A stretch of DNA of 64,000 bases from Octopus sinensis (GCF_006345805.1 NW_021833893.1:248001-312000); one strand, 5' to 3'; shown: positions 4,338 to 60,314, numbered from the stretch's first letter. Notes: a model not told the origin generated them from the letters alone. Program-made: numbers and translations.

Positions 4338-4515
4338 AAGAGAGCGTATGTGTGTGACAGAGATCTGGCTGTTATTTCTGTCAGATTACACTTCATCCTT
4401 CTTAGCTCGATTACATGTGAAAAATCAAAACTTTATCAAGTTTTATGATACACAGTCATACATCATCCATCCGCCCCTCCGTCCGCGCATGCAAATATAT
4501 GTTATATATAATGGT

Positions 4516-8536: not shown

Positions 8537-8936
8537 ATATATATATATATAAACTTGCTTAGAGAAGAAGAAACGAAACGAAACGAAACGAATCGAATCG
8601 AATCGACGCGAGGGCGCTCAGTCATACAATAGTGTAATAAATAAAATATATGCATACATACATACATATATGTACGTACCTACATCTACATGTATATATA
8701 CATGCATATATAAATATATATACGTGAGTACAGGACACCACAAATAGACGTAGAACTCAACGAGAAACGAAAACGTAAAAACAAGCATGGAACGGACCTT
8801 TTTTTTAACAACGAAAAAACAGAGTACAAGACAAACACACAAGGAAAAATCCCCTTCATCAGCTGTCCCTAGTTCAACCCCAGCGTGTTTGTGTGTGTGT
8901 GTGTGTGTGCGAGCGCGCGCGTATGTATTTTTGCGT

Positions 8937-9137
8937 GTCTGTGTTTGTCCCCCCACAATCGCTTGACAACCGATGTTGGTGTGTTCACGTCCTCGTAACT
9001 TAGCGGTTCGGCAAAAGTGACCGATAGAATAAGTACTAGGCTTACAAAGAATAAGTCCTGAGGTCGATTTTTTCGACTAAAGGCGATGCTCCAGCATGGC
9101 CGCAATCAAATGACTGAAACAAATAAAAGAATAAAAG
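8937..9137 (+). mobile_element. tRNA-SINE family A, 3' half
   Basis: Matches 42330-42537 and ends AAATGACTGAAAC-AATAAAAG. Confidence 0.85.
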
Positions 9138-9778
9138 AATATATATCGATACATATAAATTTGACATGGGCGATTCTTTCTTGTCTTGGGATCCACGCTC
9201 AATGGCTGGGTGGAATTGCGCAAAAAATTACACAGATGTGTAGAATGATCCAGTGGTGATGATGGGCTTTGTATTTTTTCTTAGCTCCTATGGTTACCGA
9301 GATAATCTACTATAATAATAATCTTGTGTTTATGAATGAGAAAGGAAGGGGTGATAGATGAATAAGAAAGGAACGAGTGATACTTGGTAGTGGGGTGATG
9401 AAAATTGTTCGCTGAAAAAATAAATCAAATAGCGTTTCAACTTTGTGTGAATATATGTGTGTGTATGTAAAAGGGGGTATGTGAATATGTTTGTGCGTAT
9501 GTGTGATGTGTGTGTGTGTGTGTGTGTGTGCGTGCGCGCGCGCGCGCAATGGAAGTAAGATGGTTCATCTTTGTTCACTTAGTATTTGAGTTTATATTTT
9601 GATTTGGTTGAATCTTGGTTGTTTTTTTTGTTGGTCAGTTATTTTTAGCATTTTGACAGAAAAAAATGTTATTCTAAAAATGTTTTTAACGTAAGCGTGC
9701 CCAAACAAGACAAATGCTTGCACAGAGCAGGTTTTACAGCCACATCATCGAAACCGACCGGGTAAAACCGGGCTTAGC

Positions 9779-32058: not shown

Positions 32059-34650
32059 ATACACACACATGATGGACACTCTCGTCGATTTTGGCGTATG
32101 ACGATCCGACAAACTACACTTTCTTTGTCAGTCATAATGCTTCTGTCTAATGTGACATTTAAGTCCTGCCAACGACTTATTATAAAGACCGCAGATGTTG
32201 CAAGTATGCGGATTACGGGTCAGTGCAGGCGATGTATTCGCAGCCACTTCTCTCCTTTGCCTGTTAATGCTGGTGGAAATAAAATCTCTTATACTTATTT
32301 CACACGACGGTCTCCATTCTGATTGCTCCAAGGATATTTCTTCAAAGGTGTTGTGAGCTATATAGATTGTGAGTTATATAGGTTACTTATCCTTATATCT
32401 GAGCCATGGTCGACCAACATTCTTGTATCCATATGAAGCTGGGTGTACATGAGGACTTTGGGTATTCTTTTGTCACCCATTCTGACAACATGACCAGCTC
32501 AGCGTAATTGCGACTGCATAAGGAAACTTTTGATTCCGTCAATCTTATACTTGCTAAATAGGCCTACATTAGACACTCTGTGTTTTAGTGTATAACCGCA
32601 GATTGTTCTAAGACAGCCTTTGTGGAAGACGTCTAGTTGGTTAATGTCCCACCTATAGGGTGTCCACGATTCCGTGCCATGGCAGTTATAGACCTGTATT
32701 TTGATGTCAAGTATAATGCTTCTTTCATTCCATAGGCAATGACGGAGTTCGCTGCGTTGGTTGCTTTAGCAAGACGGTTGACAATTTCATCAGCAAGGGA
32801 AGCGATTGAGTTTACTTTATTACCAAGGTATGTAAATGACTTCACATACTTAAGTTTTTCCCGTTAATCTGTATAGGAGTGTCAGGGAAATTCTGAACTG
32901 GTGGTCTCTGCATGACGCCTTGAATTTGCTCAGGAGGTTGGAAGATCACTTCTATCTTCGTTATGCTGATGGTCAAACTGAAGGCTTAACATGCAGCTGA
33001 AAACCAACCAAGAAGTTCCTGAGCTTCCTCTAGGGAATCACTACTAGTACAGCGCAAAGCAGATCACGAATGATACTGGTGCATAGTAGTGTTTTGGCTT
33101 TGAAACGCTGATGAGTGAATAGTCCACAACATGCTTGTAACTGTAACTTAACACCACTTACTATGTCGTCCAAAGCATACTTCAATATCATCGAAAAGAA
33201 GAGTACAAAAAAAAACAAGGTCGATGACGCAACCTTGCTTTGTGCCATTTGTAACATCGTAGGGAGCAGAAGATTCCCCGCACACAGTAGCAGCTTTTGT
33301 TCCCTCATAAAAGATGATAACATTCAATGTATTGTCAGGTATACGAAGCTTTTTCAGAACATACCAAAGCGCTTGCAGGTTAACAGTGTCAAAAGCCTTA
33401 ATAAGGTCAATGAATACCATGAATAGCTCCTGATGTTTCTCACGTACCTTCTCGGTGACCTTGACGAAGGGAAAAGATCATGTCGATAGTGCTATTCTGG
33501 ATAGATGTCATTTACGACGTATTTGATGATCCTGTCAATAATTAGTCGAGCAAAAACTCTTACCAGCAATAGACAGAAGAGATATCCCACGATATCCTTT
33601 GTTCTTATAAAGTTGTTGAACTGATGCGTCCTTAAATCCTGTACTACACTGCCTATCCTCCAAATATTTATTAAGAAGACGTGCAATTTCTTGAGAAGCT
33701 TCTGTCCACCGTACTTGTAGATTTCAGACGGGACAGCATTCTTGCCAGGCGCTTTACACGAAGAGATCTATCTAACAGAGTTTATCACTTACAGGAAGGT
33801 TGGCCTTAGAGACAGTTCCGGTATTTCAGCGTAATGTGAAACAGACACTATAACGTCATCATCAATGACCGGGGTAGAATTCAACTCAGCTTCGAAGTGG
33901 TCTTTCTATCTTTTCAGGAAGTCAGATTTGTCAGTTAACAGTGCCTCTCCATTGGATGAAAAAGTTGGAATAACACTGTGCTCTTAAAGGCCATACACTT
34001 TCTCGAGGGTATTATAGAAAACTTTTGAATTCTTTGTCGTCAGTTTCTTGGAGTTCAGTAGTTTGGATGTCCACCGAGCCTCCTTCATCTGTCTAAGAGC
34101 ACGTTGGATCATTTCTTATAAGCATTTTTTTGCTGGATGGGCTCTTATTATTGATCCATGTTTTATGAGAGCTGTACATTTTATTTATCGACTGCTGGAC
34201 ATCTGTACTGTTATCATGAAACTAATCTTGATATTTACGAACAAAAGATGACTCGATGTCATCACTGATATCAACAATGCTGAGTGCAGTGATCAGATTA
34301 TTAGAGAGCTCAGCCAGCGGATTTCAAAGACAAAATATTGGTGCGCTTAAACAATGATGACCTTTTTAGTATTATGTGTTTCAGATAGAGCGTAGCCTCA
34401 CCACGAAGAAGAAAATGGATAGAGAGATAACAGATGTTATGAAAGGAACATGTAATGTTAAAGTTCCTTTTTCTCGCGTCTTAGTGATATGCCAATTCTT
34501 AGATCTAGGATGCATCCAGGTCGTCTTGAAAACGTTCCACTGTTGAAAGATGCTTAGATCGAATTTCCTGCAGATGGTGAGCATGCACAGACCCCTGGAG
34601 TTCATTCGATCTGCACCATGACGACCAAGAATACTCTCTCATGTCTGATA
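32045..34650 (-). mobile_element. Decayed RTE-clade LINE (APE, RT and C-terminal C2H2 finger)
   Basis: WMHPRSKNWH (APE), FIDLIKAFDTV, GTKQGCV, FTYLG and CNICGLYNKSLAGLKCHIRQKH, followed by a (TG)n tail. Confidence 0.88.
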
Positions 34651-34654
34651 GTCA

Positions 34655-35275
34655 GTACTAACATAAGAATTGTTAGAAAGGATCACAAAACTACAGCTCC
34701 CAAAATTACTGCAGAGCTTAATGACAAACTCAGTTTCCACAAAAACTGTTCGCCATGAGCTACACCAAACCGGATTTCACAGGAGGCCTGCAATCAGAAA
34801 ACCACCACTTTCAAAAACAAACATTGCAAAGCGTTGAGAATAGAATAAAAACCTACAGAATTGGTCCCTAGAGCAGTGGAAGAATGTTATTTCTTGGACG
34901 AGTCAACCTTTACCTTATTTCCGACCACCGGCCGAGTATATGTGTGGAGACAGCCAAAAGAAGAATTTGGCCCAGTCTGCCTTCTTCCAACTGTTAAACA
35001 GTTGTGGTGATCTGGGGGCGCTATATCTTGGAAATCCGCCGGCTCAATGGTTTCCCTTCATGGCAAAATTAATAGTCAAGACTATTTAAGCATTTTTCCG
35101 ATCAAATTCATCCTATGGTTGCAGAACTGTTTCCGGAGGGAAACGCAATCTTTTAGGATGATAATGCACCAAGCAGCTATGTTGTTACTGAATGGCACGA
35201 GGAACATTCTAGTGAAGTTGAACATCTTATTTGGCCACCATGGTCCCCAGATCTCAATATTACTGAACATTTAAC
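34655..35275 (+). mobile_element. Tc1-like transposase remnant
   Basis: IVRKDHKTTAPKITAEL; WKNVIFLDES; WPPWSPDLNITEHL. Confidence 0.85.
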
Positions 35276-35276
35276 G

Positions 35277-35357
35277 GAGTTAAAACGAACATACCAAAAA
35301 GATTCCGAAGGAAAAGAGAACAAACCAATACATCATAAAAAAAACACAAAACCCACA

Positions 35358-35422
<65 letters not shown>

Positions 35423-36060
35423 GCACACACAACAATGTGAAAATAAGAAGAGATGCGCACAAAAACAAGACACACCGATAAACGAAATACAGACAACCCT
35501 AGAGAACAACGCACTCATACAGCACATCACTGCTATCATCCCCTCAAAAAACTGCCCAGAATCTCCTACCAAGCATCCACATGCAGACACACAACACAGT
35601 CAAACCCCGCCAAAACAGATAGCATACTTAATGACATCCATAGAAAAAAATTACAAAATTAAAAAAACATTATTAGACTACGCATCAGACACAAAATGCA
35701 TCTTAATTGATAAACAAAGACACGCAGCATTAAAAGAAACATTCAAATCCGGTATAGATCCACTGGGGTTAGAAGTGAGGTTTGATTCCCTCCCCACCGG
35801 TGGTAGAATATAGTGAACTTATGCCATATTTTGTATGGTAAAGTAAAAAAAAAAGTAAAATTGTTTTAAACGATTGAAAATTGTTGAACTAACAGATAAT
35901 TAACAGTAAAACGTGACTGCCTGAGAGTGGGGTTCAGATAAGACGTTCATCCTCATTTTGTATATTCATTTCATTCATAGTTTTGTATTTTGTCACAACT
36001 TGTATTGTCTGTCCTTGTGCCATCCCTTCTATGTTACGCCTTTATGGCGAATAAAGAAAA
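35277..36060 (+). mobile_element. Tx1/L1-type array unit U0 (5'-truncated; ORF1 tail and 3' UTR)
   Basis: C-terminal module (KCILIDKQRH...GIDPLGLEV) homologous to U1 and U2; shared 3' UTR; AATAAA at 36050. Confidence 0.75.
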
Positions 36061-37744
36061 TGTTCCAATCACCTCCTAGCTTGCTAGTGTGATTTTGTTT
36101 GCGGCTGCGTGCCTACTGTTACGTTCCTCGAAATACTCTTATTATTGTTACCATTCTTAGAGATTGTTACCGTTGGATTCTTATTGCTGTTTCGCATACG
36201 GGCTTGTGGTTTTTGTTTGTTTTTCTTTTCCTCAGTTTGGGGTAAAGAATTTTGAAATGGAGTATTCATAGGAACACGTCGGGAGCTTTGTGTCGGCGGC
36301 GGGTAGTCGCACGACCAGCGCTACGAGCACATTGGAGGTACGAGAGGTGGCAATAGCCCTCGAGAAGCTAGCAAGACACAGGGAGCTGCTCCAGAAGGAA
36401 GGGGAAAGTCTAGGGCTGACTCCTCCGGAAGAAGTAACTAAAAGCATGGGTAAAAGGACAGTTTTCTATAGAACGCTGTCCTTAACCAGCAAAAAGATAG
36501 AAATGGCGGTAGAGGAAGCCATAGAAAAGTGCATGGAGAGTATAAAGAATACAATAATATTTTACACCCGAGGAAGAAGGTACGATACAGTGGAGGTGAG
36601 GTTCGCCACTGAAGAAGAGTCACTCATCCACTCCACTGTGCCTTTAAGGTCAGAGGAATGGGTACTCCTGCCAACCTATTGCGGCAAAAGGGGTCGCAAG
36701 GATCAGGGTTGGCAGGGTGCCTCCTGAAATAGAAGAGGCGTGGCTGGTGGCAGCTATAATCTACGATACAAAGGAAACAAGAATTTTGCAAGTGACAAAG
36801 ACTAAAAATGTGAATTGGTTGGGTTATGGCCTGGAAATGGTGATCCAGGCCACCCAAGATTTAAACTCTATATCGGAGGAGATACTGTTGCCAGAAGATA
36901 GGAAATTGAGAATGATAGTGAGGGCCGACCGCACACCTGCTACCACTATGGAGAGAAGGGGCACATGAAAGTAAAGTGCCCCGAGTTAAAAGAAAGTATC
37001 GAGAGGGCAGCCCTAACAATCGAAGAAAACACAGAGGAACCAGAGGAGGGAGGATTTACTGAGGTTCCAAAGAGAAAGAGAGGTAAAATAACGGTTTTGC
37101 CTCAGAAGAACAACATAAAGAAAAAAAGAAGAGTGCAATATGGAAGACGAGACACACAGATAAATTCACATAGCACACATTACCACCACAAGCCCCACAA
37201 AAAAAGAGATATCACCCCACATAGTCCTAGTTAACCAGACAGGATTCCAACCAGAATTGCAGACAATACACAGCCCGTCAAAACCACCAGAAAACAAAGA
37301 GCATATATCATGACATATAAAAAAGTACATCAATTGAAATTAGGATTGCGAAAATAAGTTGGCAATGAGAATAAAATTCCCAGCGGAGGAAAACAGGAAA
37401 GGTGTCTTAACCGACGTAGAAGGATACCAAAAATTAAAAGGATCGAACATTGACCCTTTGGGACCGGAGGTGGAGTACGGTACCTTACCTCCGGTCGTTG
37501 ACTATGACGACTTAACGCCATACAAAGTACGTTCATTCTATGATTATAGCACAAGATAAAAAAAACTTTAAAAAAACCAGTTAAATGTAACCACCCGAGA
37601 GTGGGGCTCGAGTGGACATTACACCCTCATTTTGGTATAATTTCACTTTTCATTCGTTTCATGTTTTTGTCCCCACTTGAATAGTTCTGTCTGTCCTTGT
37701 GCTGTCTCCTCTATGTAACGCCTTTATAGCAGAATAAAGAAATT
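36061..37744 (+). mobile_element. Tx1/L1-type ORF1-only unit U1 (1684 bp)
   Basis: Frameshifted gag-like ORF1 from about 36257 (SAAGSR, VFYRTL, YDTVEV, PPEIEEAWL, degenerate knuckle CYHYGEKGHMKVKC). No ORF2 before AATAAA at 37733. Confidence 0.85.
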
Positions 37745-39456
37745 TGTTCCAGTCATCTCTGAGTTAGTCGTGATTTTTGTTTGAAGGCTTTGTGCGGAAA
37801 ACTGTTACTGTTGTTGAATATTGATGCTGTTGCTGTATATTGCTGCTGTATCGCCTGCGGCCCTGTGTTATTGTTTGTTTTTCTTTTCCCCATTTAGGGA
37901 TAAAGAGATTTGATAAAAAAGATGAATTGTTCACCAGAACAAGCCAATGTCGGGAGCTATGCTTCGGCGGCGGGAAGTCGTACCCCCGCAACGAATTCGC
38001 TGAAGATGCTAGAGGTCGATATTGATCATGGGAAATCGGAGAACTACAAAGAACTGTTCCAGAAGGAAGCGTCAAATTTAAGGTTGAGATCCTCCGGAAG
38101 AAGTAACCAACAATACAAAAAAGAGGACAGTGTTCTACAGAACGTTGTCTTTAACCAGCAAGAAGATCGAGATGGCAGCAGATGAGGCCATCAAGAAATG
38201 TTTGGAAGAGACAAAAAGCATCGTGATATTTTACACTAGAAGAGGAAGATATGGCACAGTGGAAGTGAGGTCTGTCACTGAAGAAGAGGCAATAAATCAT
38301 TCAACTGTACCACTTAGGTCACATGAATGGGTGCCCCTGCCGATCTACTGCAGCAGATGAGTCGTTAGAATTAGGATCGACAGGGTGCCACCCGAGATTG
38401 AAGAAGCGTGGCTGGTAGCAGCCGTGATGTATGGAGCCCGGGAAGATACGAAGATCGTACAAGTAGCAAGAATGAAAAAAAATGAATTGCTGGGGTTACG
38501 GCCTGGAAATGGTTATCCAGGCTACCCAACAAGACTGGAAGTAACGGAAGGAGTGCTACTACCAGAAGATAGAAAATTGACAGTGGCGGTAGAGGGAAGA
38601 CCGCCCACCTATTACCATTGTGGTGTAAAGGAGCACATTAAAATAAAGTGCTCCCAGATAAGTAATGAAACAACGGAAAATCAGAATGAACCAAGTAGGA
38701 GTACTGAGACAACAGCCCCAGCCCAGGAGGAGAGTATGGATGAGACAGAGGAGGAAGAATTTATCGAAGTTCCCAAAAGAAAAAGAAATGTAACAACAAA
38801 TTCATCCCCGAAAAGCTCTAAGAAAAAGGGGAGAAATAACAAAACTGCAGACACTACAAAAAACACATAACATATTAGATACGCCCACATAGCATACATC
38901 ACCACCAGTGAAAAAAAGAAACCGTCCCAGATAGCCCTAGCTCACCACGTAGAAAAGCAGATACAAATGCAGACAGACACAACCCCCCGTAAAAACAAAG
39001 TACACAATCATGACATATTCCAAAAGAACGGCAATTGAACATAACATCACCAAATTCAAATCGATTATCAGAGTGAAATTGCCGACTGAGGATCATTCTG
39101 AGAATACCAAAGGCTTATTAATAGACAAAGAAAGAGATGCCAAATTAAGGAATTGTTTGGTTCACATTGGGATTGGAGGTGGAGTACGATGACCTCCGGT
39201 CGTGGATTATGAGGACTTAATGCCATACATGAACTGGTAATACGAAGTGAGTAAAATTTTATACGATAAAAAATGATTAAAAAACAGTTAAATGTAACTA
39301 CGCGAGAGTGGGGCTCAGGTGGCCGTTTCACGCCCATTATTATATAAGTTCATACTCATCCACTCATTTTGTGCTTTATGTCCCCACTTTGTATTATTTT
39401 GTCTGTTCTTGTACTGTCCCTTCTATGGAAGGCCCTAAGTGGCCAATAAAGAGATA
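37745..39456 (+). mobile_element. Tx1/L1-type ORF1-only unit U2 (1712 bp)
   Basis: ORF1 from 37922 (MNCSPEQANVGSYASAAGSR...PPEIEEAWL...YYHCGVKEHIKIKC); AATAAA at 39445. Confidence 0.85.
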
Positions 39457-41760
39457 TGTTCCAGTCATCTCTGATTGAGTTAGTCGTGATTTTTGTGTAA
39501 AGGCTTTGCGCTTATTGTTGAATTATGTGGAATACTGTTACTGTTGCTGAATATTGCTGATTTACCTGCGGGCCTGTGTCTTTGTTTGTTTTTCTCTTCC
39601 CTATTTAGGGGCAAAGAGACTTGAAGAAAAAATGAATTGTTCTCCAGAACAAGCCATGCCGGGAGAAGGACCCAAGCAAGGGGGATATCATTAATAATTT
39701 AGGCCCATAACTCTGCTAAACATAGAGTTAAAGATTTTGGCCAAGGTATTAGCCAAGAGAGTGAGGCTTGTCGTGAGCGACCTAGTGGGAGAGGCGCAAA
39801 CATGCGCCATCCCAGGAAAGACGATACACGACAACCTTCACCGCATCCGCTACACCATAGAGCGGGTTAGTAAAGTTCCTAGCAAGGGTGGGACACTGGT
39901 GAATTTGTACCAGTCTAATGCCTTCGATAGGTTTGGCCACCGGTATCTGGCGGCCCGACTTTCCGTGGTTGGATCAGCGCTATGTATCGAGTCCGTTGTC
40001 CGAGTGAACAGTTTCTTCTAGAATCCGTTCGCAATCGAACGTTCAGTTCGCCAGGTTTGACCCCTGTCCCCGCTTCTATATGTATTGGCTCTTGAGCCAC
40101 CGCTGCGAAGTCTGGGGGCCGCGGGGGTCAATCTGAGGAGCGACGGCGTACGCGGATGATGTCAGAGGAGCGACGGCGTACGTGTCTGATGAAAGGCAGC
40201 TACCTCGTGTAGAAGACGCGATCAAAAGATACGAATCGGTGGCAGGGGCAAAAATTAACCAAGAAAAAAATCAGTCGGCTTGCAACTCGGCACCTGGAGA
40301 TGCAAGTCGATGCCTCCCAACAGCGTCGTTGGACGTTGGACGGAGGGCCAGGTTAAACTACACGGAGTCTGGTTTGGGCTAGATTTCCAGATGGAGAAAA
40401 ACTGGCGCGAGCAAGCAAGGTAACTGCTCTGACCCAGACCTGGTCTGGGAGGACATTATCCTTGCTAGGGAGGGAAGAAGTTACACAAGGGTTCATAGCA
40501 TCGGTAATAATCTACCGCCTAACCGTCGTGCCTTGTCCCAAGTTGTGGCTGAACAAGTTGGAACGGCTCATATTCCGCTTTTAGTGGAAAGGGAAACCAC
40601 TGCTTGTGAGGTGCTTTCTCTGCTGCCAAAAACCGTTAAAGGGTGGGTTAGGGATGCCTTGGCTGGTGATGCGCAAATTTGTGTTGAGGATGAGACATCT
40701 CCAGCTCTACTTGGATGGTGAACAGGTGTGGTCACCTCACGTTAAGTTTTTCTTCTCGCAATTAACGTCCTTGTGGGACTTAGGCCCATGGATCAGGCGT
40801 AAACCTAGATTGTAAGAATGGCAGCTGGAGTGCAGATAAGCATTCACTCCGCTCTCCCGGGTGAGTAATACCGGCAACGGGGCTACCAATACGGATTTCT
40901 ATAGCGGGTTGGTAGAGTACAAGTCTGACGACGTCACGAGGGAAAGTCTAGGCTTCGATAGGGACCAGTTAATCAACCTGTTTGGAAGGACATACGGGCC
41001 GAAGTACCTGGATAACTTTCAGAAATCCCTGACTTGGTTTTACCGGTTCGAGAGAGGCTGTCAAGGTACAGTTTTGGCGTCCCTCCCACGTATCCGGGCT
41101 GCGGGCGGGAGAGTGAAATTGCCGCACACACCTTTGTGCAATGTGTAGAATTGAGGGGGCTGATTGCCTATGTCGAACAGCTGATGTCGGATGCAGAAGG
41201 AGTACAGCTATCGGCTGAGTCCATCATCAAGATCGTATCGCCTTCCTCCTTAAATAAAGAAAGGGAAGCGTGTTTTTTTCTATGTAGTAGCCATACTGAA
41301 AAATACAGTATGGACGACGCGTGGAAGAGGAATTGAGATGGGCAACTTTATCTCTGGAGGCGGGTTGGTTAGTTGTTTCAACTACCACCTGCTAAGCAAG
41401 ATCCGTCGAGAAAGAAAATGTCTGTCTCAAAAAGTATTTGCGAAAAGATGGATGTCAGTGGTAAAGATGCTGCGGGCAAATGGAACCGAATCAGTGTAGC
41501 CGGTCAGAGGCAACGAAAGAGAGGAGAAAAAATAAAAACATAAGCCTTATTGAAAAAAAGGAACCGGCGGGTTAATCAGATCCCCGAGAGCTTTAATTCC
41601 AGTGGAATTTTCATACTCATAAACTTTTAACTTCATAATCATCCCATTTCAAATCCGATTTGATTATAATTTTGTTTTTATGATGGTAATACCATATTTA
41701 TGTATGTAAGTGCCCATGTATGTCCCCCTTTATGTAATCTTGTGGGAAATAATAGAAATA
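39457..41760 (+). mobile_element. Tx1/L1-type unit U3, deletion fusing the ORF1 start to the RT/C-terminal ORF2
   Basis: U2-like 5' UTR and MNCSPEQA start at 39632, joined at about 39665 to DPSKG...PITLLNIELKILAKVLAKR...AQTCAIPGKTIHDNLH; CCHC-like C-terminus (YPGCGRESEIAAHTFVQC). Confidence 0.85.
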
Positions 41761-43880
41761 TGTTCCAATCATCTCGACTTGTTCGTGTATGTTTGTGCGT
41801 TGTAAAGATTATAGTTAAGTGTTGTGTTTTTTGACACACTTGTTTTTGCTGTCGTACGGCAGTTTTGTTAACGCTGTTCCCCCTATTTGAAAGGAGCAGC
41901 GCTGTTTGAAAAAGAGAAATGATGATAAACTATGAGAACTTAAACCCCTCAGAATTCTCTTCGGAGGAGGAACTAATAAAAGCCCTGGACAATGCAGACA
42001 GGAAGATGGATTTCACAATGGTGGCCAGAAGCCACCAAAAACAAATTAATTTGGGAGAAATTGGTAGAGATACTAAGAAGAGACGGATACTATGTGAAGC
42101 AATTCAAGGTGAAAAAGGAAATGTTTACAGAACAGGAGTGGCTGTGTGGTAAGTAGCTTGCTAACCAACCACATGGTTCCGGGTTCAGTCCCACTGTGTG
42201 GCATCTTGGGCAAGTGTCTTCTATTATAGCCCCGGGCCGACCAATGCCTTGTGAGTGGATTTGGTAGACGGAAACTGAAAGAACCCCTCGTATATATGTA
42301 TATATATATGTATGTGTGTGTTTGTGTGTCTGTGTTTGGCCCCCTAGCATTGCTTGACAACCGATGCTGGTGTGTTTACATCCCCGTTACTTAGCGGTTC
42401 GGCAAAAGAGACCGATAGAATAAGTACTGGGCTTACAAAGAATAAGTCCCGGGGTCGATTTGCTCGACTAAAAGGTGGTGCTCCAGCATGGCCGCAGTCA
42501 AATGACTGAAACAAGTAAAAGAGTAAAAGAGTAAAAGAGAACATTTTCAGTAAAGAACAGGAAAACTAAGGTGATGACAGTTGCACAAATTGAAAAAGCT
42601 TTAAAACCCATATGGAGAGAGATTGTGTACCTCAACAGAAGCCGATTCAGAACTGTATAGGTGCGGTTCCGAGATGCATCGACCGCCAGGCAACCCTTTT
42701 AAAAACGGAGGAGGTGGTGCTTCTACCCATATACCTTGGAAGACGTGCTTCCAGGATAAGAGTAGAAGACATACCCCCAGAAATAGACGTAGCCTGATTG
42801 TTGGACGCTATCCTATGGGCTTGGAGAAGGTGGTGGTCCTCCAAGCCGCTTGTACTACCCACAAGAATTGGTAGGGGCAGGGTTTCTATATGATGATCCA
42901 GGTCGCCCTGGAAGTCCTAGAAAATATGATAGAAACTATAACGGCTGAGGACATGATATTGAGGGTTTTAGTGGAGGGCAGGATCCCTCGATGCTACAAA
43001 TGTGGCCAAAAGGGTCATGTTAGGGTAGACTGTCCTTTATCACCCGCAGAAATACAAGCCAAGCCTGTGACTAGGAAGGAAGCCGCAGCTCTACCTTCGG
43101 CAGTAACCAGTGCAGAAGCAAAGATAGACGAAAATAAGGACGACGACAGATGGGAAAAAGTGGAAAAAAAATGAAAGAAAATGAGAAAGACACAGCCTGT
43201 GAGGGATGAAACCCATCCCACGCCCACTCGACTCCCATCCAAGTTCACTTTGTCCCACCGATCCCCAGCAGACACTAACCCTCTCCCTGTTCTACCCGAC
43301 ACGGAAAAAATGAGCATATGCACAAAGGAGCCCCAAATTTCCCAACCCCTGCCCTGTAAGGAAAGAAAGGGAAAAGAGAAGTACATCGTTTTTTACGATG
43401 AAGCAAATGCCAAATTTATAAAGGAAATCCATCGTTGGGACAAGACAATAAATGTGAGCACGTATCTTTGTTATGAGGTGTCCAGGAATTTGGATTGTAT
43501 TATAGTCAACCCTATGTATGTGGATAAACTAAAAGAATAAGAAGAGAACATTAAATACGTGGCAAAGAATATAGATACCAGCGAGATGCCCACAATGGTG
43601 AGTCTATTTAAATTAAAACAAGACTTTGGTTTAGACATTTTACAATGTTTTTCTTCAAAAAAGAGAAAAAGTTATAAAACCTCGAGAAAAGGGTAAGATT
43701 GTAAGGTTAAATGAAGGCACCCGGACATGGGGGTCGGCCTCATCATTTCATTACTCATTTTATTTTATTTTATTTTTATTCATCCTTCCATCCGTTTTTG
43801 TGTCCCCACTTTCATTGTACCGTCTTGTTTATGTACTGTCTATTCTATATTTAGTCCCCTGTGGGCAATAAAAAATTCGT
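41761..43880 (+). mobile_element. Tx1/L1-type ORF1-only unit U4 (about 1.71 kb without the SINE)
   Basis: ORF1 from 41919; PIYLGRRASRIRVEDIPPEID; intact knuckle CYKCGQKGHVRVDC; AATAAA at 43867. Confidence 0.85.
42135..42537 (+). mobile_element. Full-length tRNA-SINE family A inserted in U4 ORF1
   Basis: Complete head, (TA/TG) spacer, body and (GTAAAAGA)n tail; probable TSD AGAACA on both sides. Confidence 0.92.
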
Positions 43881-46570
43881 TGTTACAATCATCTCTGACC
43901 GACTTGTTCGTAAATGTTGTTCGAAAGGTTTGGCGTAAGTTTTATGGATAATTTGCGGTTTATTTGTTGAATTTGCACTGTTGAATTATTACGTTTTGAA
44001 CTTTTGTTGAGTGTTTTTTAAACACCTATTTCTCTGCTTTTGGTAGTCCTTTGTTAAAGTTTCCCTCCTTGTGTGAAGGGGGAAAATATTGTTGTATTTT
44101 TCAAAAAAAAAAAAAAAGAAAAAAGAAAGTAAAAACCATGGACAAATCACCTATTAATGCCAAAACCAGTAGTGAACCTGGTACAAGTGAATGGAAAGAT
44201 ATCACAAGCGGAAAAGGTAGCGCAGTTTTAAATAGCATTCCGACAGGAGAAGAATTTATTCAAGGAAGAAAAGCTAGCAATTTTGCAGCAGCGGCCGGTG
44301 TCTCAAAAACGACAATAGATTGTGGAAGCAATGAGCTCGGAAGATACAAAGGTATAATGAAAAGGGAGGGGAGCGAAACAGAGATTACTCCTCCCAGTGA
44401 AATGACGCATAATGCACTACGGTGTACCGTGATATACAAATCATATATGACCAAAGCAAAAAGTAAAGAGGCGGTGGAGCTGCGTCTCCGTCCAGTCTGA
44501 AACGACGTGGCATACGTCACAAGAGGAGTGAAGTATTACACAATAGAAATCCATTTCAAAACCTAGGAAAAGGCAAAACATGCATCAACAGAACCATTAA
44601 AAACTGCGGTGGAGGTGGTTCTCCTACGTTTTTATCTTGGAAGGCGAACTTCCAAAATTAGGGTAGGAGATATCCCACCTGAAATAGGCCCCGCTAGGCT
44701 GGTGGAAGCCATAATAAACAGCTTGGAGGATAAGATTACAATTCTCCAAGCCTCAGCGTTGGGACTGCAAAATTGGCCGGGTCAAGGCCTGGAAAAGATT
44801 ATACAAGCTGCCCCGGCGGATTTAGAAAATATAGACACTATACAGGTAAGAGAGACTAAGCTGGGAGTCACAGTAGAGGGGAAGAAGCCTCGTTGCTACA
44901 TGTGTGGTCAAAAAGGTCACATTAGGGCCGAGTTCCAACCTCCCCTCAAAAAAGCAGTGACTCCCCCCACCTGCAGAAAAACAAACAGAAGCTGCAGAGG
45001 AAACGTTGAACAAATTTCTGAAAATGAAACAAAAGAGGAGATGGAGGAAGCCCAAGGAGAAAGGTGGGAGATTTTCTCCAGAAAAGGAAGGAAAAATCGC
45101 CCAATCCAACCCCACTAGCCCCACAACAAAACATAAAAAAAACGGCAACCAACCGAACACACAAACACTAAAAGATCCCAGCCCAAAATGTTCCCCTCCC
45201 ATCTAGACATAGATTATACTACAGTAGTGACGACTAACAAGTCACTACTGCAGCAATTGAAAGACGTGCCTAATGCGGACAACAGCACAAAAACCCTTGA
45301 GGGAAAAAACTTTCCCCCAAATATAGCAATTTATAATATAGACAGGGCTAACTATAATAGGTTAGCAAACCAATTAAAAAATGATATAGGCCCTCCGAGG
45401 AAAGACTTTTCCCCATTAATGTTTGAGAGCCTTGTCAACGACACCTGGCAAACCCCGGATCAAAAATCAAAGGAATGAGATGGTAGTGCTACCCCATTTC
45501 CAACCGTTAGTACAACGTTATGGATACACTTTATGTTGGATGTTTAATTGTACGCGACCTGGGGGGATGGGCAAAATGGAAACAACGTCGTTTCTTGAAT
45601 GGCCTCAGGTCGCTTAGAATGGATATTACAGTTGCCACAGAGTCCAGATTGGGTAGTCGACGGGGTTTCCTCCACTCCTAAATGGCTACGAGAAAGTTAT
45701 TTCTCCGTGCCTACCTGGAGGAGGAAGAGGCGTTGCTGTGCTGCTCAGAAAAATAAACTATCGTGGCACTAAGCAGCGGTAAGATCTTCAGGCTGGTAGC
45801 TGTCTACGCTACCTCGTGAACTGGACAGTCTGATTTTTTTAGGCCTGGAGAAGTTTCTTGGGACCTCTCACACCATAGTAATGTTAGGTGATTTAACGTA
45901 ATCGGCGATGCACGTGTAGATTACGTTGGTTCGTCTACTATTAGAAGGGGAAACCCGTGCTTCAGTAATCTGCTTAGTCCATTTCAGCTGGTAGATAGGT
46001 ATAAACTAGATGTCCTAGACGCTCCATTCTGGACATGGACTAATAGCGATGAGTCATCTAGATCTTATTTAGACAGAATTCTAATTAGGGAATTAGGGAA
46101 ATAGACAAAAACCTAGTTAGTCGTCCACAATTTCACTATGTCATCTATAGTGATTACAAATTTGTGACTTGTAGGCTGGACTTAAATGAGTTACGTAGAC
46201 AGGGATTACGTATAGCAAAGAGTTAGTGGCTAAGAAAAATTGAGTAGAAAGGCTTTAGACGAAGCACTGGAATCTGACTCCGCACCTCGAGTTTTTGCTG
46301 TGAGAATGGCGCTTAACCTTCATCTCGAGACTAAAAAAGAAGGATGCGTATTCAGGGTTAAGCAACTTGCAATGAGACGGGAAGGAATCAAAGCTGCGAG
46401 ATGGACCTGTGTGATAGAGACCCAACGTGGACATAATGGCACTATAAGGTCGTTGAGAATGATCAAGGGAACCCGAGGAGATGTGTAAGGTCTTTAAGGT
46501 GCATTTCGCCCTGCTTTTCGGAAGGGGCGGCGGGATGGAATGTAGGAGGGACCTTACGGACCTCCTCGTG
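43881..46570 (+). mobile_element. Tx1/L1-type unit U5 (ORF1 plus decayed APE/linker of ORF2), 3' end lost
   Basis: ORF1 from 44138 (NFAAAAG, RVGDIPPEIG, CYMCGQKGH). APE remnants FRLVAVYA, WTWTNSDESSRSYLDRIL, SDYKFV. Confidence 0.8.
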
Positions 46571-46594
46571 TCATTCTTCATGCCAATTATCGAC

Positions 46595-46950
46595 CACACG
46601 TTTCACTAATGAGTCTCCAGAAGTTGAAGGAACTTAGCTACGAGGTTCTTCCCCGCCCAGCTTATTCCCCATACCTTATTCTCCTACCGACTATCACTTT
46701 TTCAATCACCTTATGGTTTCCTGCGAGAAAAGAAGTCCAAAAATCGAACCGATGCTGAAAGTGCGTTCGAAGAGTTCATCAGCTCCAGAACTCCAGATTC
46801 TTATGTTAGCGGAATAAACAAATTTGTAACTCGTTAGCAAAAATGTGATGATTGTAATGGTACTTTGAAGAATAAAATTTCCGCTGTGTTGAAATATATT
46901 GTGATTAATCTCATGTTTCAAAACGTTGCTTTCTTTTTATTCAGCCTGAC
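46595..46950 (+). mobile_element. Mariner transposase 3' remnant
   Basis: LQKLKELSYEVLPRPAYSPYL, then (frameshifted) SPTDYHFFNHL. Confidence 0.75.
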
Positions 46951-47117
46951 ATACACACTCACACACACACACACGCACACACACATACACGCACACACAC
47001 ACACATACACACACATACATACACACACACCCATATACATACATACATATATATATATATACACACACATTATATATATATATAGGTACATACATACATA
47101 TATATATATATACATTT

Positions 47118-47149
<32 letters not shown>

Positions 47150-47182
47150 TTATATATATATATACGTAATACATATATACAC

Positions 47183-47237
<55 letters not shown>

Positions 47238-47654
47238 CTACATATATATAAAATTTGGTATAAGATAAAAATTTCAGATATTTGTCTTAAACTTTCAGAC
47301 AAGCAAATTCATAATTCAGATGTATGATATGAGATATTATTCGATTAAAATAACCGCATATTTATATTAAGACATAGATGATAAAAAATATAGAAATATT
47401 GGCTGAAGGAGATTGGAATAGAATGACGTGTAGAGCTCCTACAGAACGTTTCTCTCTTAGGGACAGCGAAGATTATCAGGAGGGTGCTAAGCACTTGAAA
47501 TAATCTAAGGTTACAGTTAAAAACCCACTATCCACATAAATCCATTCAGGAGTAAGACCGAACCTGAGTAAAACCAAATAATAATAATCTCTAACAATAC
47601 TAATGATAATACTGCTGCTGATAAGATTAATAACAACAACAATAATAATAGTTT

Positions 47655-47887: not shown

Positions 47888-49156
47888 CCCCCATGTAAAC
47901 AAAATTCTCCTTAAAATCATCCAGAAGCGCCTGAACACAACTATTGAGAGAGAATTGCCAGAGGTGCAAGCTGGTTTCAGAAAGGGAAGAGGCACCCGCG
48001 ATCACATCGCCAACCTACGGTGGATTATGGAAAAGGCAAGAGAATACCAAAAGAAGCTGTACATGTGTTTCATCGATTACTCCAAAGCCTTTGACAGCAT
48101 TGATCATGACAAGTTATGGAAATGTCTGGAGGAAATGGGAACACCTTTACACCTTGTCCAGCTTATTAGATCACTCTATCAAAACCAAAGGCTACAGTAC
48201 GGACACCATATGGCGACACTGATTGGTTTGAGATTGGAAAAGGCACTCGGCAAGGTTGCATCCTGTCACCAGTAGCCTTCAACATGTGCGCTGAAAAGGT
48301 CATGAGGAACGCAGGCCTGGAGGATAGCAGCATTGGAGTGAGGATTGGAGGAAGAAATATTAATAACCTTCGCTATGCAAATGATACAACCCTGCTGGCG
48401 GAGAGTGGTAAGGATCTGCAGGATCTTGTCCTGCTGGTCAAGAAAGAGAGTGAGAAATTTGGGCTGTACCTCAATGTTAAGAAAACGAAGATCATGTCAA
48501 CAGCAGCCACAACAAACTTTAGCATCAAGATCGATAATGAAGAGATCGAAGTGGTTGATGATTTCATCTTCCTTGGCTCCAAAATAAATCGAGATGGTGA
48601 CTGCACCCCAGAAATAAGACGGCGGATAGTACTAGGCAGAGAGGCAATGGTCAGCATGAGCAGGGTCTGGAAGAGTAGAGACATCAGACTCGCTACCAAA
48701 TGCAGATTGGTGAATGCAATTGTCTTCCCAATAGCAACATATGGATGCGAGACCTGGACACTAAAGAAAGTTGACCAGAAGAGAATTAATGTATTCGAGC
48801 TTTGGTGTTGGAGAAGACTTTTACGGATTCCATGGACAGTGAGGCTCACCAATGGAGAAGTTCTTAAGCAGATCAGGCCGAAAGTGTCGCTAGAAGCTAG
48901 GATTTCCAAGCATAGAGTGGCATATTTCGGTCATATTATGCAGAGAAAATCCCCGGAGAAGGACATCATGCTCGGAATGGTCAGTGGCAAGAGAGGAAGA
49001 GGCCGACCAAGAACCCGCTGGCTTGACACCATCAAGAATGATACCGGAATGGACATAGCCAATCTGAAAGAAGCGGCCCAGGATAGAACTGACTGGAGGA
49101 CACTGGTCCAACGACTAACCGAGAGTCGACTTCGACTGAGCGGATAGATAGATAGA
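47888..49156 (+). mobile_element. Relatively young 5'-truncated RTE (BovB-like) LINE with 14-bp TSD
   Basis: RT motifs QAGFRKGRGTRDHI, FIDYSKAFD, NLRYAND; long open C-terminus; (ATAG)n tail; TSD TAGGAATAACTGAT at 47874-47887 and 49157-49170. Confidence 0.93.
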
Positions 49157-59181: not shown

Positions 59182-59659
59182 GTTATTGTTGTTGTTAAAG
59201 CGGCGATCTGGTAGAATCGTTAGCACACCGGGCGAAATGCTTAACAGTATTTCTTCCATCTTTATGTTCTGAGTTCAAATTTCACCAAGGTCGACTTTGC
59301 CTGTCATTTTTCAGGTTCGATAAAATAAGTACCAGTTCACCACGGGGGTCGATGCAGTTGACTAGCCCCCCAAATTTCAGACCCTGTACCTGTAGTAGAA
59401 AGGATTATTATTATTGTTGCTGTTATTATTTATGCTCTGTGTACAAATTCCAATACAATGGAAAATAATGTTCATTTTTGTATACTTCAACTTTATTTAT
59501 ATTTGAAAAGTTTTCTCTTTCTTGTTTTAATTGCAAAATCGATAAGATCCTCGAAACTAACCTTACGTAACGCATTTGCTTCTATACTTTATAGATATGA
59601 GGTATCCAGCCTGCTTTGTATAGTTCCTCTGTAGGGATTTTTAATATGGACACTCAGCC
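58873..59659 (+). repeat. Identical 115-bp direct repeats (58873-58987 and 59545-59659)
   Basis: AGATCCTCG...CACTCAGCC; no difference found by eye. Confidence 0.9.
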
Positions 59660-59945
59660 TCTGGCCGACCAAAGCCTTGTGAGTGGATCTGGTAGACGGA
59701 AACTGAAAGAAGCCCGTCGTATATATGTATATATGTTTGTGTGTCTGTTTGTCCCCCCCAACATCACTTGACAACCGATGCTGGTGTGTTTACGTCCCCG
59801 TAACTTAGCGGTTCGGCAAAAGTGACCGATAGCATAAGTACTAGGCTCACAAAGAATAAGTTCTGGGGTTGATTTGCTTGACTAAAGGCGGTGCTCCAGC
59901 ATGACAACAGTGAAATGACTGAAACAGGTAAAAGAGTAAAAGAGT
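59005..59945 (+). mobile_element. Split SINE family A (head 59005-59089, body 59656-59945) enclosing a family B SINE (59197-59400)
   Basis: The head stops at CAAGTGTCTT and the body resumes at GCC...GGCCGACCAAAGCC, close to collinear with the 42135 copy. Confidence 0.8.
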
Positions 59946-60314
59946 ATTAATATTAGAAATATTTGGAAGGCACACTCAATATTGTCTTCTACAATTATTT
60001 TACAAATTACGAGATGTCACTTTTATCACTTCGGTATCTATCGCAACATACTCTCATATTTTAAGTACATTTTACTTTCACAATTTTACGACGGTAAACT
60101 TCATGTTAACGAAAATAAGCAAATAGTAAGGTCTATTTCGGAGATGTATTTGCCTAACAAGTAATTTGATGTGAGAGAGGTCGCCAACAGAGGTGGATGA
60201 TAGCCACAAAATCCCTTCCCTGCAATATGGCTGGTCTTCCACTCAAATCCCAAGCAGTTGTTACAAATGCCTATTTTCACTTCTCCCCATCATCATCTGG
60301 ATTAGATTAACAGA

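What the first reader, a model, noticed from the sequence alone, without database searches (positions are those of the whole stretch)
35277..46570. Head-to-tail array of six divergent Tx1/L1-type retroelements, half of them ORF1-only units of about 1.7 kb
Seen: six same-strand units abut with no host DNA between them. U1, U2 and U4 measure 1684, 1712 and about 1710 bp (after removing a SINE) and run 5' UTR, gag-like ORF1 with Zn knuckle, 3' UTR, AATAAA, with no RT. U3 and U5 carry ORF2 remnants. ORF1s are clearly homologous yet visibly diverged, and their C-terminal modules differ, so recent tandem duplication fits poorly. Known: ORF1-only L1 derivatives (HAL1) exist; Tx1-clade elements are often target-specific; Drosophila HeT-A forms head-to-tail gag-only arrays. 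Inference: a group of non-autonomous half-Tx1 families and autonomous partners that insert repeatedly at one motif or at each other's ends. I cannot say whether this is already described for cephalopods.
Basis: partly seen in the sequence, partly recalled or inferred. Interest (0 to 1): 0.88.

Follow-up and report, generated by a model that had tools for sequence, protein, structure and literature searches.

The report
Head-to-tail array of octopus LINE copies
A real 11-kb chain of six dead L1/Tx1-type retrotransposon copies, joined tail to head with almost nothing between them and half of them lacking the reverse-transcriptase gene; it is of moderate interest to transposon biologists because the copies come from long-diverged lineages and similar unit-to-unit joins appear at other octopus loci.

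Summary
Window 35277-46590 (+) holds six same-strand units joined 3' end to 5' end with only 1-5 variable bases at each junction. I reproduced the 1684-bp (U1) and 1712-bp (U2) units. U4 is 2120 bp, about 1715 without its SINE. These units are 5'UTR, ORF1 (two RRM folds plus a CCHC knuckle) and a ~170-nt 3' module ending AATAAAGAAA, with no ORF2. U3 carries RT plus zf-RVT and U5 carries an APE-type endonuclease remnant. U1 and U2 ORF1s diverged under purifying selection (omega about 0.19; third-position excess p=3e-11) and share no disabling lesions, so in-place tandem duplication followed by decay is rejected. A second tail-to-head junction lies on an O. bimaculoides chromosome, and a third gene model holds two ORF1s. 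The joining mechanism is not settled. Every right-hand unit has a complete 5' end and only the leftmost unit is 5'-truncated. That fits serial template switching during one reverse-transcription event slightly better than repeated self-targeted insertion. I rate it a new variant of known kinds (HAL1-like ORF1-only elements, LINE concatemers).

The parts
35277..36060 (+). U0: 5'-truncated unit. It holds the ORF1 C-terminal tail with a (CA)n expansion, the post-ORF1 region and the 3' module ending AATAAAGAAA.
   Evidence: Homology to the U1/U2 post-ORF1 region and 3' module. It abuts a Tc1-like fragment at 35277.
36061..37744 (+). U1: ORF1-only unit, 1684 bp. ORF1 is at 36257-37234 with 1 stop and 2 frameshifts.
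37745..39456 (+). U2: ORF1-only unit, 1712 bp. ORF1 is at 37922-38870 with 1 stop and 3 frameshifts.
39457..39665 (+). U3a: 5'UTR plus the first ~11 ORF1 codons (MNCSPEQAMPGE). The 5'UTR is 82% identical to that of U2.
39666..41760 (+). U3b: ORF2 remnant running from RT through the zf-RVT region (stop near 41497-41499), then a 3'UTR ending AATAATAGAAA. Heavily frameshifted.
   Evidence: RVT_1 1.4e-13. tblastn to ORF2 relatives at 45% over 370 aa. Weak zf-RVT hit.
41761..43880 (+). U4: ORF1-only unit interrupted by a tRNA-derived SINE (42135-42539). ORF1 is at 41919-43174 with an intact CCHC motif.
43881..46590 (+). U5: 5'UTR, ORF1 at 44138-45118 (only 2 in-frame stops), inter-ORF region, and ORF2 start with an APE-type endonuclease remnant from 45520. 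Cut at about 46590.
37578..37744 (+). The shared ~170-nt 3' module; this entry gives the U1 copy. Other copies: 35898-36060, 39286-39456, 41564-41760, 43706-43880. It runs from CAGTTAAATG to AATAAAGAAA and is common to ORF1-only and ORF2-bearing units.
   Evidence: It is homologous to the 3'UTR of ORF2-bearing copy L003, which ends at the same point.
37582..37623 (+). Candidate RNA hairpin at the start of the 3' module, with loop (A/U)GUGGGG. Other copies: 35908-35949, 39289-39330, 43708-43750.
   Evidence: RNAfold z about -2 in 4 of 8 copies. The outer stem covaries: AATGT/ACATT, AACGT/ACGTT, AAATGA/TCATTT, and AAATGG/CCATTT in L006.
37745..37759 (+). 5'-terminal motif TGTTCCA(A/G)TCA(T/C)CTC, the most conserved block of the unit. 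Also at 36061, 39457, 41761 and 43881.
   Evidence: Conservation line of alignment A1.
34330..35276 (+). Left flank: Tc1-like transposase remnant truncated at ...WSPDLNITEHL.
   Evidence: Translation. No family scan was run.
46600..46860 (+). Right flank: fragment of a mariner-like transposase C-terminus. It is not the continuation of the left flank.
   Evidence: Translation. No family scan was run.

Best explanation
What it is (confidence about 0.85). The region is a chain of dead retro-copies of an octopus L1-superfamily, Tx1-like LINE group, drawn from at least four long-diverged lineages. A full element would read: 5'UTR starting TGTTCCA.TCATCTC; ORF1 with two RRM folds and a CCHC knuckle; a short inter-ORF region; ORF2 with APE endonuclease, RT and a zf-RVT motif; and a ~170-260-nt 3'UTR that begins with a hairpin and ends AATAAAGAAA(T) with no poly(A). 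U0, U1, U2 and U4 belong to an ORF1-only ('half') form. It keeps both termini and lacks exactly ORF2, so it resembles mammalian HAL1, and its ORF1 evolved under purifying selection before these copies died. How the chain formed (inferred; about 0.45 for this specific route). I favour end-to-end joining by the elements' own reverse transcriptase during one target-primed reverse-transcription event, or a few. In this model cDNA synthesis starts on the rightmost RNA, U5, which is the ORF2-encoding one and would be favoured by cis preference. The RT reaches the 5' end of that RNA, switches to the 3' end of another family RNA, and repeats the switch. It aborts inside the last template, which becomes U0, within a Tc1-like target. 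One later deletion then removed the 3' part of U5 together with the right flank. Another deletion fused two units into U3. Shown: the anatomy, the termini, selection on ORF1, the independent lesions, and one further junction at a second locus. Inferred: template switching, the order of copying, and the deletions.
For: ORF1 homology among units. The ORF1 fold is two tandem RRMs plus CCHC. ORF2 is L1-like. The 3' terminus is fixed by ORF2-bearing relative L003, which ends ...GGCCAATAAAAGAAATC and then runs into (ATT)n. U1 versus U2 ORF1 mismatch by codon position is 0.205/0.268/0.459 on a nucleotide-level alignment (chi-square p=3e-11), and NG86 gives omega about 0.19. Frameshifts and stops are not shared between units. 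All five right-hand units in the window, and the one in L006, start at a complete 5' end. The leftmost unit is 5'-truncated in both arrays. Junctions carry 1-5 variable nt with no poly(A) and no target-site duplication. By my own count from the translations, the four ORF1s carry 3, 4, 6 and 2 lesions, which is compatible with a single age but has little power. A second tail-to-head junction lies in O. bimaculoides CM046615.1. UniProt A0A0L8I5B4 holds two ORF1 N-halves. Several L1-Tx1 families are co-active in Octopus (PMC13282606). Non-LTR RTs make head-to-tail products by template jumping (PMC11371274).
Against: No whole-array target-site duplication can be checked because the right end is deleted. 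The rightmost unit is 3'-truncated in both arrays, so the proposed initiating 3' end is not seen in either. Template jumping is documented for R2-type enzymes and was not shown here for this clade. Five or more consecutive switches between different RNAs would be unusual. The 6-of-6 complete 5' ends is also what 5'-end-targeted serial insertion predicts. The rate of 5' truncation in solitary copies rests on only about four examples. The unit in L006 that I call ORF1-only contains an assembly gap.
Confidence: 0.45

Rival explanations
1. Each unit is a separate retrotransposition event aimed at the end of a resident sibling. The aiming could work in two ways. The endonuclease may recognise the conserved 5' terminus. 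Alternatively, the 3'-terminal AAAGAAAU of the RNA may anneal to the same sequence at a resident's 3' end. Either way the array grows one unit at a time.
For: The 5'-terminal 15 nt is the most conserved block of the unit. The 3' end AATAAAGAAA is shared by all lineages. Tail-to-head junctions recur at independent loci. A 5'-targeted version also predicts complete internal 5' ends and a possibly truncated leftmost unit.
Against: The right-hand unit in L006 has a different 5' terminus (GTTGAGCGGCAG...), so that motif is not required. The only solitary 3' flank I could see is (ATT)n, not a sibling terminus. Logan copies L001, L013, L017 and L020 are not abutted by siblings. A 3'-targeted version predicts some 5'-truncated internal units, and 0 of 6 were seen, while 3 of 4 founder or solitary copies are truncated. 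There is no age gradient in lesion counts, though power is low.
Confidence: 0.3
2. The array is a fragment of, or a copy from, a much larger master array located elsewhere. It would have been moved here either as DNA (segmental duplication, capture of extrachromosomal DNA) or by retro-copying of a read-through multi-unit transcript. Under this model the local junctions say nothing about events at this site.
For: Both this array and the L006 pair are truncated at both outer ends, and each is flanked by unrelated truncated repeats. There is no target-site duplication and no tail at the outer ends.
Against: One ordinary deletion explains the right end here. 5' truncation explains the left end. 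No master array was seen. This model only moves the question of how units became joined to another locus.
Confidence: 0.12
3. The array arose by DNA-level tandem duplication or unequal crossing-over of a single 1.7-kb unit, possibly using the shared module like an LTR. Neutral decay and local deletions or insertions followed.
For: The periods are regular (1684 and 1712 bp) and U1/U2 align over their whole length at 68%. The module between ORF1s contains a poly(A) signal and a GT-rich stretch, and so looks superficially like an LTR.
Against: Divergence between U1 and U2 is concentrated at third codon positions, with omega about 0.19. No disabling lesions are shared. Units differ in architecture, with ORF2 in U3 and U5. 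The RT is of the non-LTR L1 type. The ORF2 copy L003 ends inside the 'LTR-like' module. 5'UTR and 3' module similarities are discordant between units.
Confidence: 0.05
4. The region is a decayed host gene cluster: a gag-like (2xRRM plus CCHC) gene domesticated from a LINE, tandemly duplicated, kept under selection for a time and then pseudogenised.
For: There is purifying selection on ORF1. An intact 294-aa ORF1 sits on identical ~1.7-kb contigs in six sequencing runs of another octopod, with no ORF2 nearby. Octopus annotations list many such 'CCHC-type domain-containing' proteins.
Against: RT and endonuclease remnants lie inside the array. Element termini and the 3' hairpin are conserved. Outer units are 5'-truncated. 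There are 827 diverse representative clusters of this ORF1. The same architecture occurs at other loci with different partners.
Confidence: 0.03

Closest known systems
HAL1 ('half-L1') of mammals (Bao & Jurka 2010; cited from my own knowledge, mentioned in papers listed)
   Same: An L1-derived element that keeps ORF1 and lacks ORF2. Its ORF1 evolves under purifying selection. It is presumably mobilised in trans by ORF2-bearing relatives.
   Different: Here ORF1 is of the RRM-RRM-CCHC type, not coiled-coil/RRM/CTD. The element has no poly(A) tail. It shares a specific 3' module and hairpin with its partners. It is found joined tail to head with siblings rather than dispersed. The host is an octopus.
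Tx1 group of the L1 clade (Xenopus Tx1L; Keno, Kibi, Koshi, Mutsu, Dewa)
   Same: APE endonuclease, RT and a C-terminal zinc motif. ORF1 has RRM and CCHC. There is no poly(A). Tx1-group elements tend to insert in repeats; here one relative ends in (ATT)n. L1-Tx1 families are annotated and recently active in Octopus vulgaris (PMC13282606).
   Different: No host-repeat target is seen in this array; the neighbour of each unit is another unit. RT phylogeny with Tx1 references was not done, so membership of the subgroup is unproven.
Drosophila telomeric HeT-A/TART/TAHRE arrays
   Same: Mixed head-to-tail arrays in which a gag-only element (HeT-A) sits beside RT-encoding relatives.
   Different: Those elements belong to the Jockey clade and attach to chromosome ends. 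Their junctions are oligo(A) joined to variably 5'-truncated neighbours (PMC5932611). Here internal 5' ends are complete, there are no A tails, and the flanks are ordinary transposon debris.
Template-jump concatemers of R2-type reverse transcriptases, and double-insertion TE tandems (McGurk & Barbash 2018)
   Same: Head-to-tail copies with few or no extra bases at the junctions are produced when the RT switches from a finished template to a new 3' end (PMC11371274). TE dimers are a known route to arrays (PMC5932611).
   Different: Documented natural non-LTR tandems are mostly tail-to-internal or carry a target duplication in the junction, for example the 33-nt rDNA repeat between R1 copies. 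This array has neither, and it mixes lineages 20-50% diverged.
Hebe of Adineta vaga (PMC2861651)
   Same: A non-LTR element whose copies keep complete 5' ends and die by internal deletions. Compare U3 here and the Logan copy L001.
   Different: Hebe is subtelomeric and dispersed, and was not reported as heterogeneous concatemers in the abstract I read.

Membership tests
L1 superfamily LINE | Reverse transcriptase of non-LTR L1 type | tested here: met
   U3 conceptual RT hits RVT_1 at 1.4e-13, 51.5 bits against a cut-off of 29.6. Relative P0007 matches human L1 ORF2p at 1.5e-21 against R2 at 2e-12.
L1 superfamily LINE | N-terminal APE-type endonuclease in ORF2 | tested here: inconclusive
   U5 45520-46180 hits Exo_endo_phos at 9.9e-5 with 22.6 bits, under the cut-off of 24.5, and only after one conceptual frameshift bridge. 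There was no PDB sequence hit.
L1 superfamily LINE | C-terminal Cys/His motif after the RT | tested here: met
   zf-RVT at 8.9e-9 in relative P0007. A weak hit at the homologous place in U3.
Tx1 group | RT groups with Xenopus Tx1L and Keno/Kibi/Koshi in a phylogeny | not tested
   No Tx1 reference sequences were available in the tools. Only the RepeatMasker-style label 'L1-Tx1' for octopus LINEs in the literature.
Tx1 group | ORF1 with RRM plus CCHC knuckle | tested here: met
   zf-CCHC in U4, U5 and P0010. The AlphaFold2 model has pLDDT above 90 over residues 100-170 and matches tandem-RRM proteins by Foldseek.
Tx1 group | Sequence-specific target | tested here: inconclusive
   One solitary 3' flank is (ATT)n. 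Six junctions lead into siblings. The outer target of the array is lost.
HAL1-like ORF1-only non-autonomous LINE | ORF1 present, ORF2 absent, both element termini kept | tested here: met
   U1, U2 and U4 run from the 5' motif to AATAAAGAAA in about 1.7 kb with no RT or endonuclease homology.
HAL1-like ORF1-only non-autonomous LINE | ORF1 maintained by purifying selection along the lineage | tested here: met
   U1/U2 omega about 0.19; codon-position chi-square p=3e-11. Other pairs are saturated.
HAL1-like ORF1-only non-autonomous LINE | Multi-copy and dispersed in the genome | tested here: inconclusive
   Four copies here, plus one probable copy in L006 that contains an assembly gap. A genome-wide census was not possible with these tools.
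HeT-A/TART-type telomeric array | Variable 5' truncation at each junction and oligo(A) joints, at a chromosome end | tested here: not met
   All internal 5' ends are complete and there are no A tails. The flanks are Tc1-like and mariner-like fragments.
Double-insertion TE tandem (R1 type) | Duplicated target sequence between the units | tested here: not met
   Only 1-5 nt of variable spacer at each junction.
LTR-recombination tandem | LTR-type element whose units were identical at birth and share an LTR | tested here: not met
   The RT is of L1 type. An ORF2 copy ends inside the module. Divergence between units is selected, not neutral.
RT template-switch concatemer | Internal units complete at both ends, a few untemplated nt at joints, and only the last-copied (leftmost) unit truncated | tested here: met
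   6 of 6 right-hand units have a complete 5' end. U0 and L006 unit A are truncated. Spacers are 1-5 nt. The pattern is consistent with this model but not exclusive to it.
RT template-switch concatemer | One target-site duplication bracketing the whole array | not testable with these tools
   The right end of the array is deleted. No orthologous empty site was accessible.

The most novel reading that the evidence does not exclude
A clade of octopus L1/Tx1-like LINEs routinely builds mixed head-to-tail concatemers in vivo by serial template switching of its reverse transcriptase. ORF1-only 'half' RNAs from several co-active lineages ride along as passengers behind an ORF2-encoding RNA. This would be natural genomic evidence for multi-template jumping by an APE-type LINE enzyme. 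It would also be a mode of non-autonomous propagation that does not need its own priming event, and a ready source of tandem arrays.
Probability: 0.3. Interest if true: 0.7.

Novelty: new variant of a known kind. Interest (0 to 1): 0.52.

Why it matters
If the census bears it out, this gives invertebrate L1/Tx1 elements a HAL1-like ORF1-only partner family. It also gives a concrete natural example of precise, tail-less, full-length LINE-to-LINE joins between diverged lineages. Such joins bear on three questions: how non-LTR reverse transcriptases finish and restart synthesis in vivo; how non-autonomous RNAs get copied; and how transposons seed tandem arrays and satellites. Octopus genomes are repeat-rich and L1-Tx1 families are reported as recently active, so the system could be studied with living copies. 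The locus itself is dead and has no evident host function.

Tried and rejected
1. I first placed unit boundaries at CAGTTAAATG, because an A-rich stretch precedes it and all junction modules align from there. I rejected this when ORF2-bearing relative L003 was seen to run through that module and stop at AATAAAAGAAATC. The A-rich stretch is templated and homologous between U1 and U2.
2. I read the inter-ORF1 module as an LTR (TATA-like sequence, AATAAA, GT-rich). I rejected this for the same reason and because the RT is of L1 type.
3. I considered that the module could be a host small-RNA gene targeted by a site-specific element. Rfam at E<=1 found nothing but microsatellite artefacts, and ARAGORN found no tRNA.
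4. I tested whether the conserved post-ORF1 'peptide' is a third ORF. The codon-position test was not significant. A 9-bp inverted repeat there suggests RNA structure instead.
5. Pfam on raw ORF pieces gave almost nothing. Conceptual joining across frameshifts was needed.
6. TRF cannot see 1.7-kb periods because its maximum period is 500.
7. Two metagenome scans with ORF1 and ORF2 profiles found no relatives. One alignment was too diverse to search with.
8. Two of the 12 contig look-ups found nothing on record (P0001, P0008).
9. Long proteins among the 827 ORF1 relatives turned out to be chimeric gene models (WD40, astacin, LDL-receptor), not ORF1-ORF2 fusions.
10. A PDB sequence search with the U5 endonuclease translation gave no meaningful hit.

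Full report
OBSERVATION. The window is AT-rich, microsatellite-rich eukaryotic DNA. The closest protein relatives of the elements come from Octopus bimaculoides, O. sinensis and O. vulgaris. Between 35277 and 46590 on the + strand, self-comparison shows repeated homologous segments. U1 and U2 align over about 2.1 kb at 68% identity with an offset of 1674-1709 bp. Four ORF1-like regions match each other by tblastn, with E-values down to 1e-39.

I anchored on the two best-conserved landmarks, AATAAAGAAA and TGTTCCA.TCATCTC. This gives U0 35277-36060, U1 36061-37744 (1684 bp), U2 37745-39456 (1712 bp), U3 39457-41760, U4 41761-43880 and U5 43881-46590. U4 is 2120 bp, about 1715 without the tRNA-derived SINE at 42135-42539. 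Between the two anchors there are only 1-5 variable bases (A, TT, TA, TA, TTCGT). There is no poly(A), no host DNA and no target duplication.

WHERE A UNIT BEGINS AND ENDS. A tandem array alone cannot show where its units start. I first favoured a boundary at CAGTTAAATG, which is preceded by an A-rich stretch. External evidence decided otherwise. An ORF2-bearing relative on a JGI contig (L003) has an ORF2 stop followed by a ~290-nt 3'UTR. That 3'UTR aligns with the module and ends ...GTGGCCAATAAAAGAAATC. After that point L003 runs into (ATT)n, whereas the window units run into TGTTCCA... (alignment A7). The ~170 nt from CAGTTAAATG to that point is a 3' module shared by ORF1-only units (U0, U1, U2, U4) and ORF2-bearing units (U3).

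That module starts with a candidate hairpin whose loop is (A/U)GUGGGG. Folding z-scores are about -2 in four of eight copies. The outer stem covaries: AATGT/ACATT in U1, AACGT/ACGTT in U0, AAATGA/TCATTT in U4, and AAATGG/CCATTT at the O. bimaculoides locus. It could be the element recognised by the reverse transcriptase, but this is suggestive only. Rfam finds no known RNA in the module.

WHAT THE UNITS ENCODE. ORF1 carries a CCHC knuckle: Pfam zf-CCHC at 5.8e-7 in U4, weaker in U5, and 3.6e-6 in the intact relative P0010. An AlphaFold2 model of P0010 has a confident core (pLDDT above 90 over residues 100-170). Its best Foldseek matches are tandem-RRM proteins such as UP1, NONO and IMP3 RRM12. 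ORF1 is therefore RRM-RRM-CCHC.

U3 has a 5'UTR and 11 ORF1 codons fused directly to the RT domain. Its conceptual RT hits RVT_1 at 1.4e-13. It aligns at about 45% over 370 residues with ORF2 relatives that carry RVT_1 and zf-RVT. Those relatives match human LINE-1 ORF2p better than R2 in the PDB (1.5e-21 against 2e-12).

U5 has ORF1, an inter-ORF stretch and then, from 45520, an endonuclease remnant. This remnant hits Exo_endo_phos at 9.9e-5, just below the curated cut-off, after I bridged one frameshift conceptually. Membership of the L1 superfamily is thus supported. Assignment to the Tx1 subgroup fits the ORF1 type and the literature label for octopus LINEs but was not tested by phylogeny. 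All reading frames are broken, so nothing in the array is active.

NOT A DECAYED TANDEM DUPLICATION. U1 and U2 are the closest ORF1 pair. On a nucleotide-level alignment that was not guided by protein, mismatches fall at codon positions 1, 2 and 3 in the proportions 0.205, 0.268 and 0.459 (chi-square p=3e-11). Nei-Gojobori estimates are pN 0.229 and pS 0.645, giving omega about 0.19. The frameshifts and stops of U1 and U2 lie at different places. Most of their divergence therefore accumulated while ORF1 was under selection, which means before these copies were laid down.

The non-coding 5'UTR and 3' module differ by only 25-30% between U1 and U2, against about 65% at synonymous sites. This points to constraint on the untranslated regions too. 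Similarities are also discordant between regions. U2 and U3 share an 82% identical 5'UTR, but their 3' modules are only 47% identical. U3 is best read as two neighbouring units fused by a later deletion, and the array once had at least seven units.

RECURRENCE ELSEWHERE. The ORF1 family is large: 827 representative clusters at E<=1e-3.

- An annotated O. bimaculoides protein (P0012) led to chromosome CM046615.1 near 28.15 Mb (L006). That locus holds a 5'-truncated unit with an intact CCHC, a post-ORF1 region containing an assembly gap, the 3' module with a perfect 8-bp hairpin stem...CCTAATAAAGAAAAC, and then immediately the 5'UTR and N-terminal half of another ORF1. This is a second, independent tail-to-head junction between different lineages.
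- UniProt A0A0L8I5B4 (P0001) contains two ORF1 N-terminal halves in one gene model. This points to a third locus with two same-strand units.
- In Logan assemblies of another octopod data set (SRR11869384-94), several decayed ORF1 copies have no sibling within 1-1.8 kb (L001, L013, L017, L020). Arrays are therefore not obligatory.
- The same runs hold an intact 294-aa ORF1 on identical ~1.7-kb contigs with no ORF2 downstream.

MECHANISM. Three retro-based routes remain.

(a) Serial template switching. One target-primed event starts on the rightmost RNA, and the RT switches from each finished template to the 3' end of another RNA. This predicts units complete at both ends internally, a few extra bases at the joints, and truncation only of the last-copied, leftmost unit. 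That is what is seen in 6 of 6 junctions and in both arrays. The rightmost unit here is the ORF2-encoding one, as cis preference would predict. Non-LTR RTs do produce such products (PMC11371274).

(b) Serial insertion aimed at a resident's 5' end. This predicts the same pattern. The 5'-terminal 15 nt is the most conserved block. However, the L006 right-hand unit has a different 5' terminus, and that conservation is equally explained by an internal promoter.

(c) Serial insertion primed at a resident's 3' end, with the RNA 3' end AAAGAAAU annealing to the same DNA sequence. This has a plausible chemistry but predicts some 5'-truncated internal units. None is seen, while three of four founder or solitary copies are truncated (U0, L006 unit A and L020, against L001).

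In Drosophila, natural non-LTR tandems made by double insertion are mostly tail-to-internal or carry target duplications in the junction (PMC5932611). Neither applies here. By my own count from the translations, the ORF1 lesions are 3, 4, 6 and 2 in U1, U2, U4 and U5. That is compatible with a single age, but power is low.

I rank (a) at about 0.45, (b) and (c) together at about 0.30, relocation of a fragment of a larger array at about 0.12, DNA-level duplication at about 0.05, and a decayed host gene cluster at about 0.03.

There are two caveats. Both arrays also lack the 3' part of their rightmost unit. The whole-array target duplication cannot be examined. Here, a single deletion from U5's ORF2 into a downstream mariner-like element would explain both the missing U5 3' part and the missing remainder of the Tc1-like element that forms the left flank.

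COMPARISON AND NOVELTY. The ORF1-only units work like mammalian HAL1, but they have an RRM-RRM-CCHC ORF1, no poly(A) and a shared structured 3' module. The mixed gag-only/RT-bearing arrays resemble HeT-A/TART superficially but fail that family's defining features: end attachment, variable truncation and A-tailed joints. L1-Tx1 LINEs in octopus are already known and reported as recently active (PMC13282606, PMC8967140). The repeat surveys I searched (keyword passages only) mention neither an ORF1-only form nor arrays. The locus is dead, the parts are familiar, and the interesting claim about how the joins are made remains unproven.

Noticed in passing
window 34330-35276 (+) and L020 2255-2331: A Tc1-like transposase remnant forms the left flank of the array and is cut at ...WSPDLNITEHL. 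A fragment of the same family (83% nt) lies about 1 kb downstream of a solitary ORF1 copy in Logan contig L020. This is probably just an abundant octopus transposon.
   Followed up: partly
window 46600-46860 (+): A fragment of a mariner-like transposase C-terminus (..YSPYLILLPTDYHFF..) begins where U5 is cut. It overlaps the same motif position as the left-flank Tc1-like piece, so it is a different element and not its continuation. A microsatellite block follows at 46940-47250.
   Followed up: partly
window 47955-49147 (+) and 33148-33420 (-): RT reading frames of a different LINE clade (AGFRKGRGTRDHI..., RTE/BovB-like by eye). They are unrelated to the array by tblastn.
   Followed up: no
window 42135-42539; also 59656-59946, 8924-9141, 4515-4765(-): A tRNA-derived SINE with a (GTAAAAGA)n tail is inserted in U4's ORF1, with a probable AGAACA target duplication. 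Other copies in the window are 75-88% identical.
   Followed up: partly
window 37463-37495 (U1) and about 39176-39200 (U2): A perfect 9-bp inverted repeat (ACCGGAGGT...ACCTCCGGT) lies in the post-ORF1 region and is partly kept in U2. The apparent peptide conservation there shows no significant codon-position bias, so it may be an RNA hairpin just upstream of where ORF2 would start.
   Followed up: partly
window 44138-45118 versus 45520-46590: Within U5, ORF1 has only 2 in-frame stops in 978 nt, while the endonuclease part has about a dozen stops and at least one frameshift in about 1070 nt. Possibly ORF2 was already decaying while ORF1 was still kept.
   Followed up: no
L007-L012 (Logan SRR11869384-94): An intact 294-aa ORF1 (2xRRM plus CCHC) sits on identical ~1.7-kb contigs in six runs. 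It has a 252-nt leader and a 566-nt A/C-rich trailer ending in an A run, and no ORF2. This could be a live ORF1-only element or a domesticated gene.
   Followed up: partly
L001 (Logan SRR11869385) 809-1759: Another internally deleted relative, in which mid-ORF1 is fused in frame to the ORF2 region downstream of the RT. Together with U3, this suggests that internal deletions are common in this family, as reported for Hebe in rotifers.
   Followed up: partly
L003 2028-2105: The ORF2-bearing relative ends in at least 22 ATT repeats, running to the contig end. This is either a microsatellite target or a repeat tail made by the element.
   Followed up: no
proteins P0051, P0081, P0135: Annotated or predicted proteins in which an ORF1 fragment of this family is fused to WD40, LDL-receptor class A or astacin/ShK domains. 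These are most likely gene-model chimeras caused by intronic or adjacent element copies.
   Followed up: no
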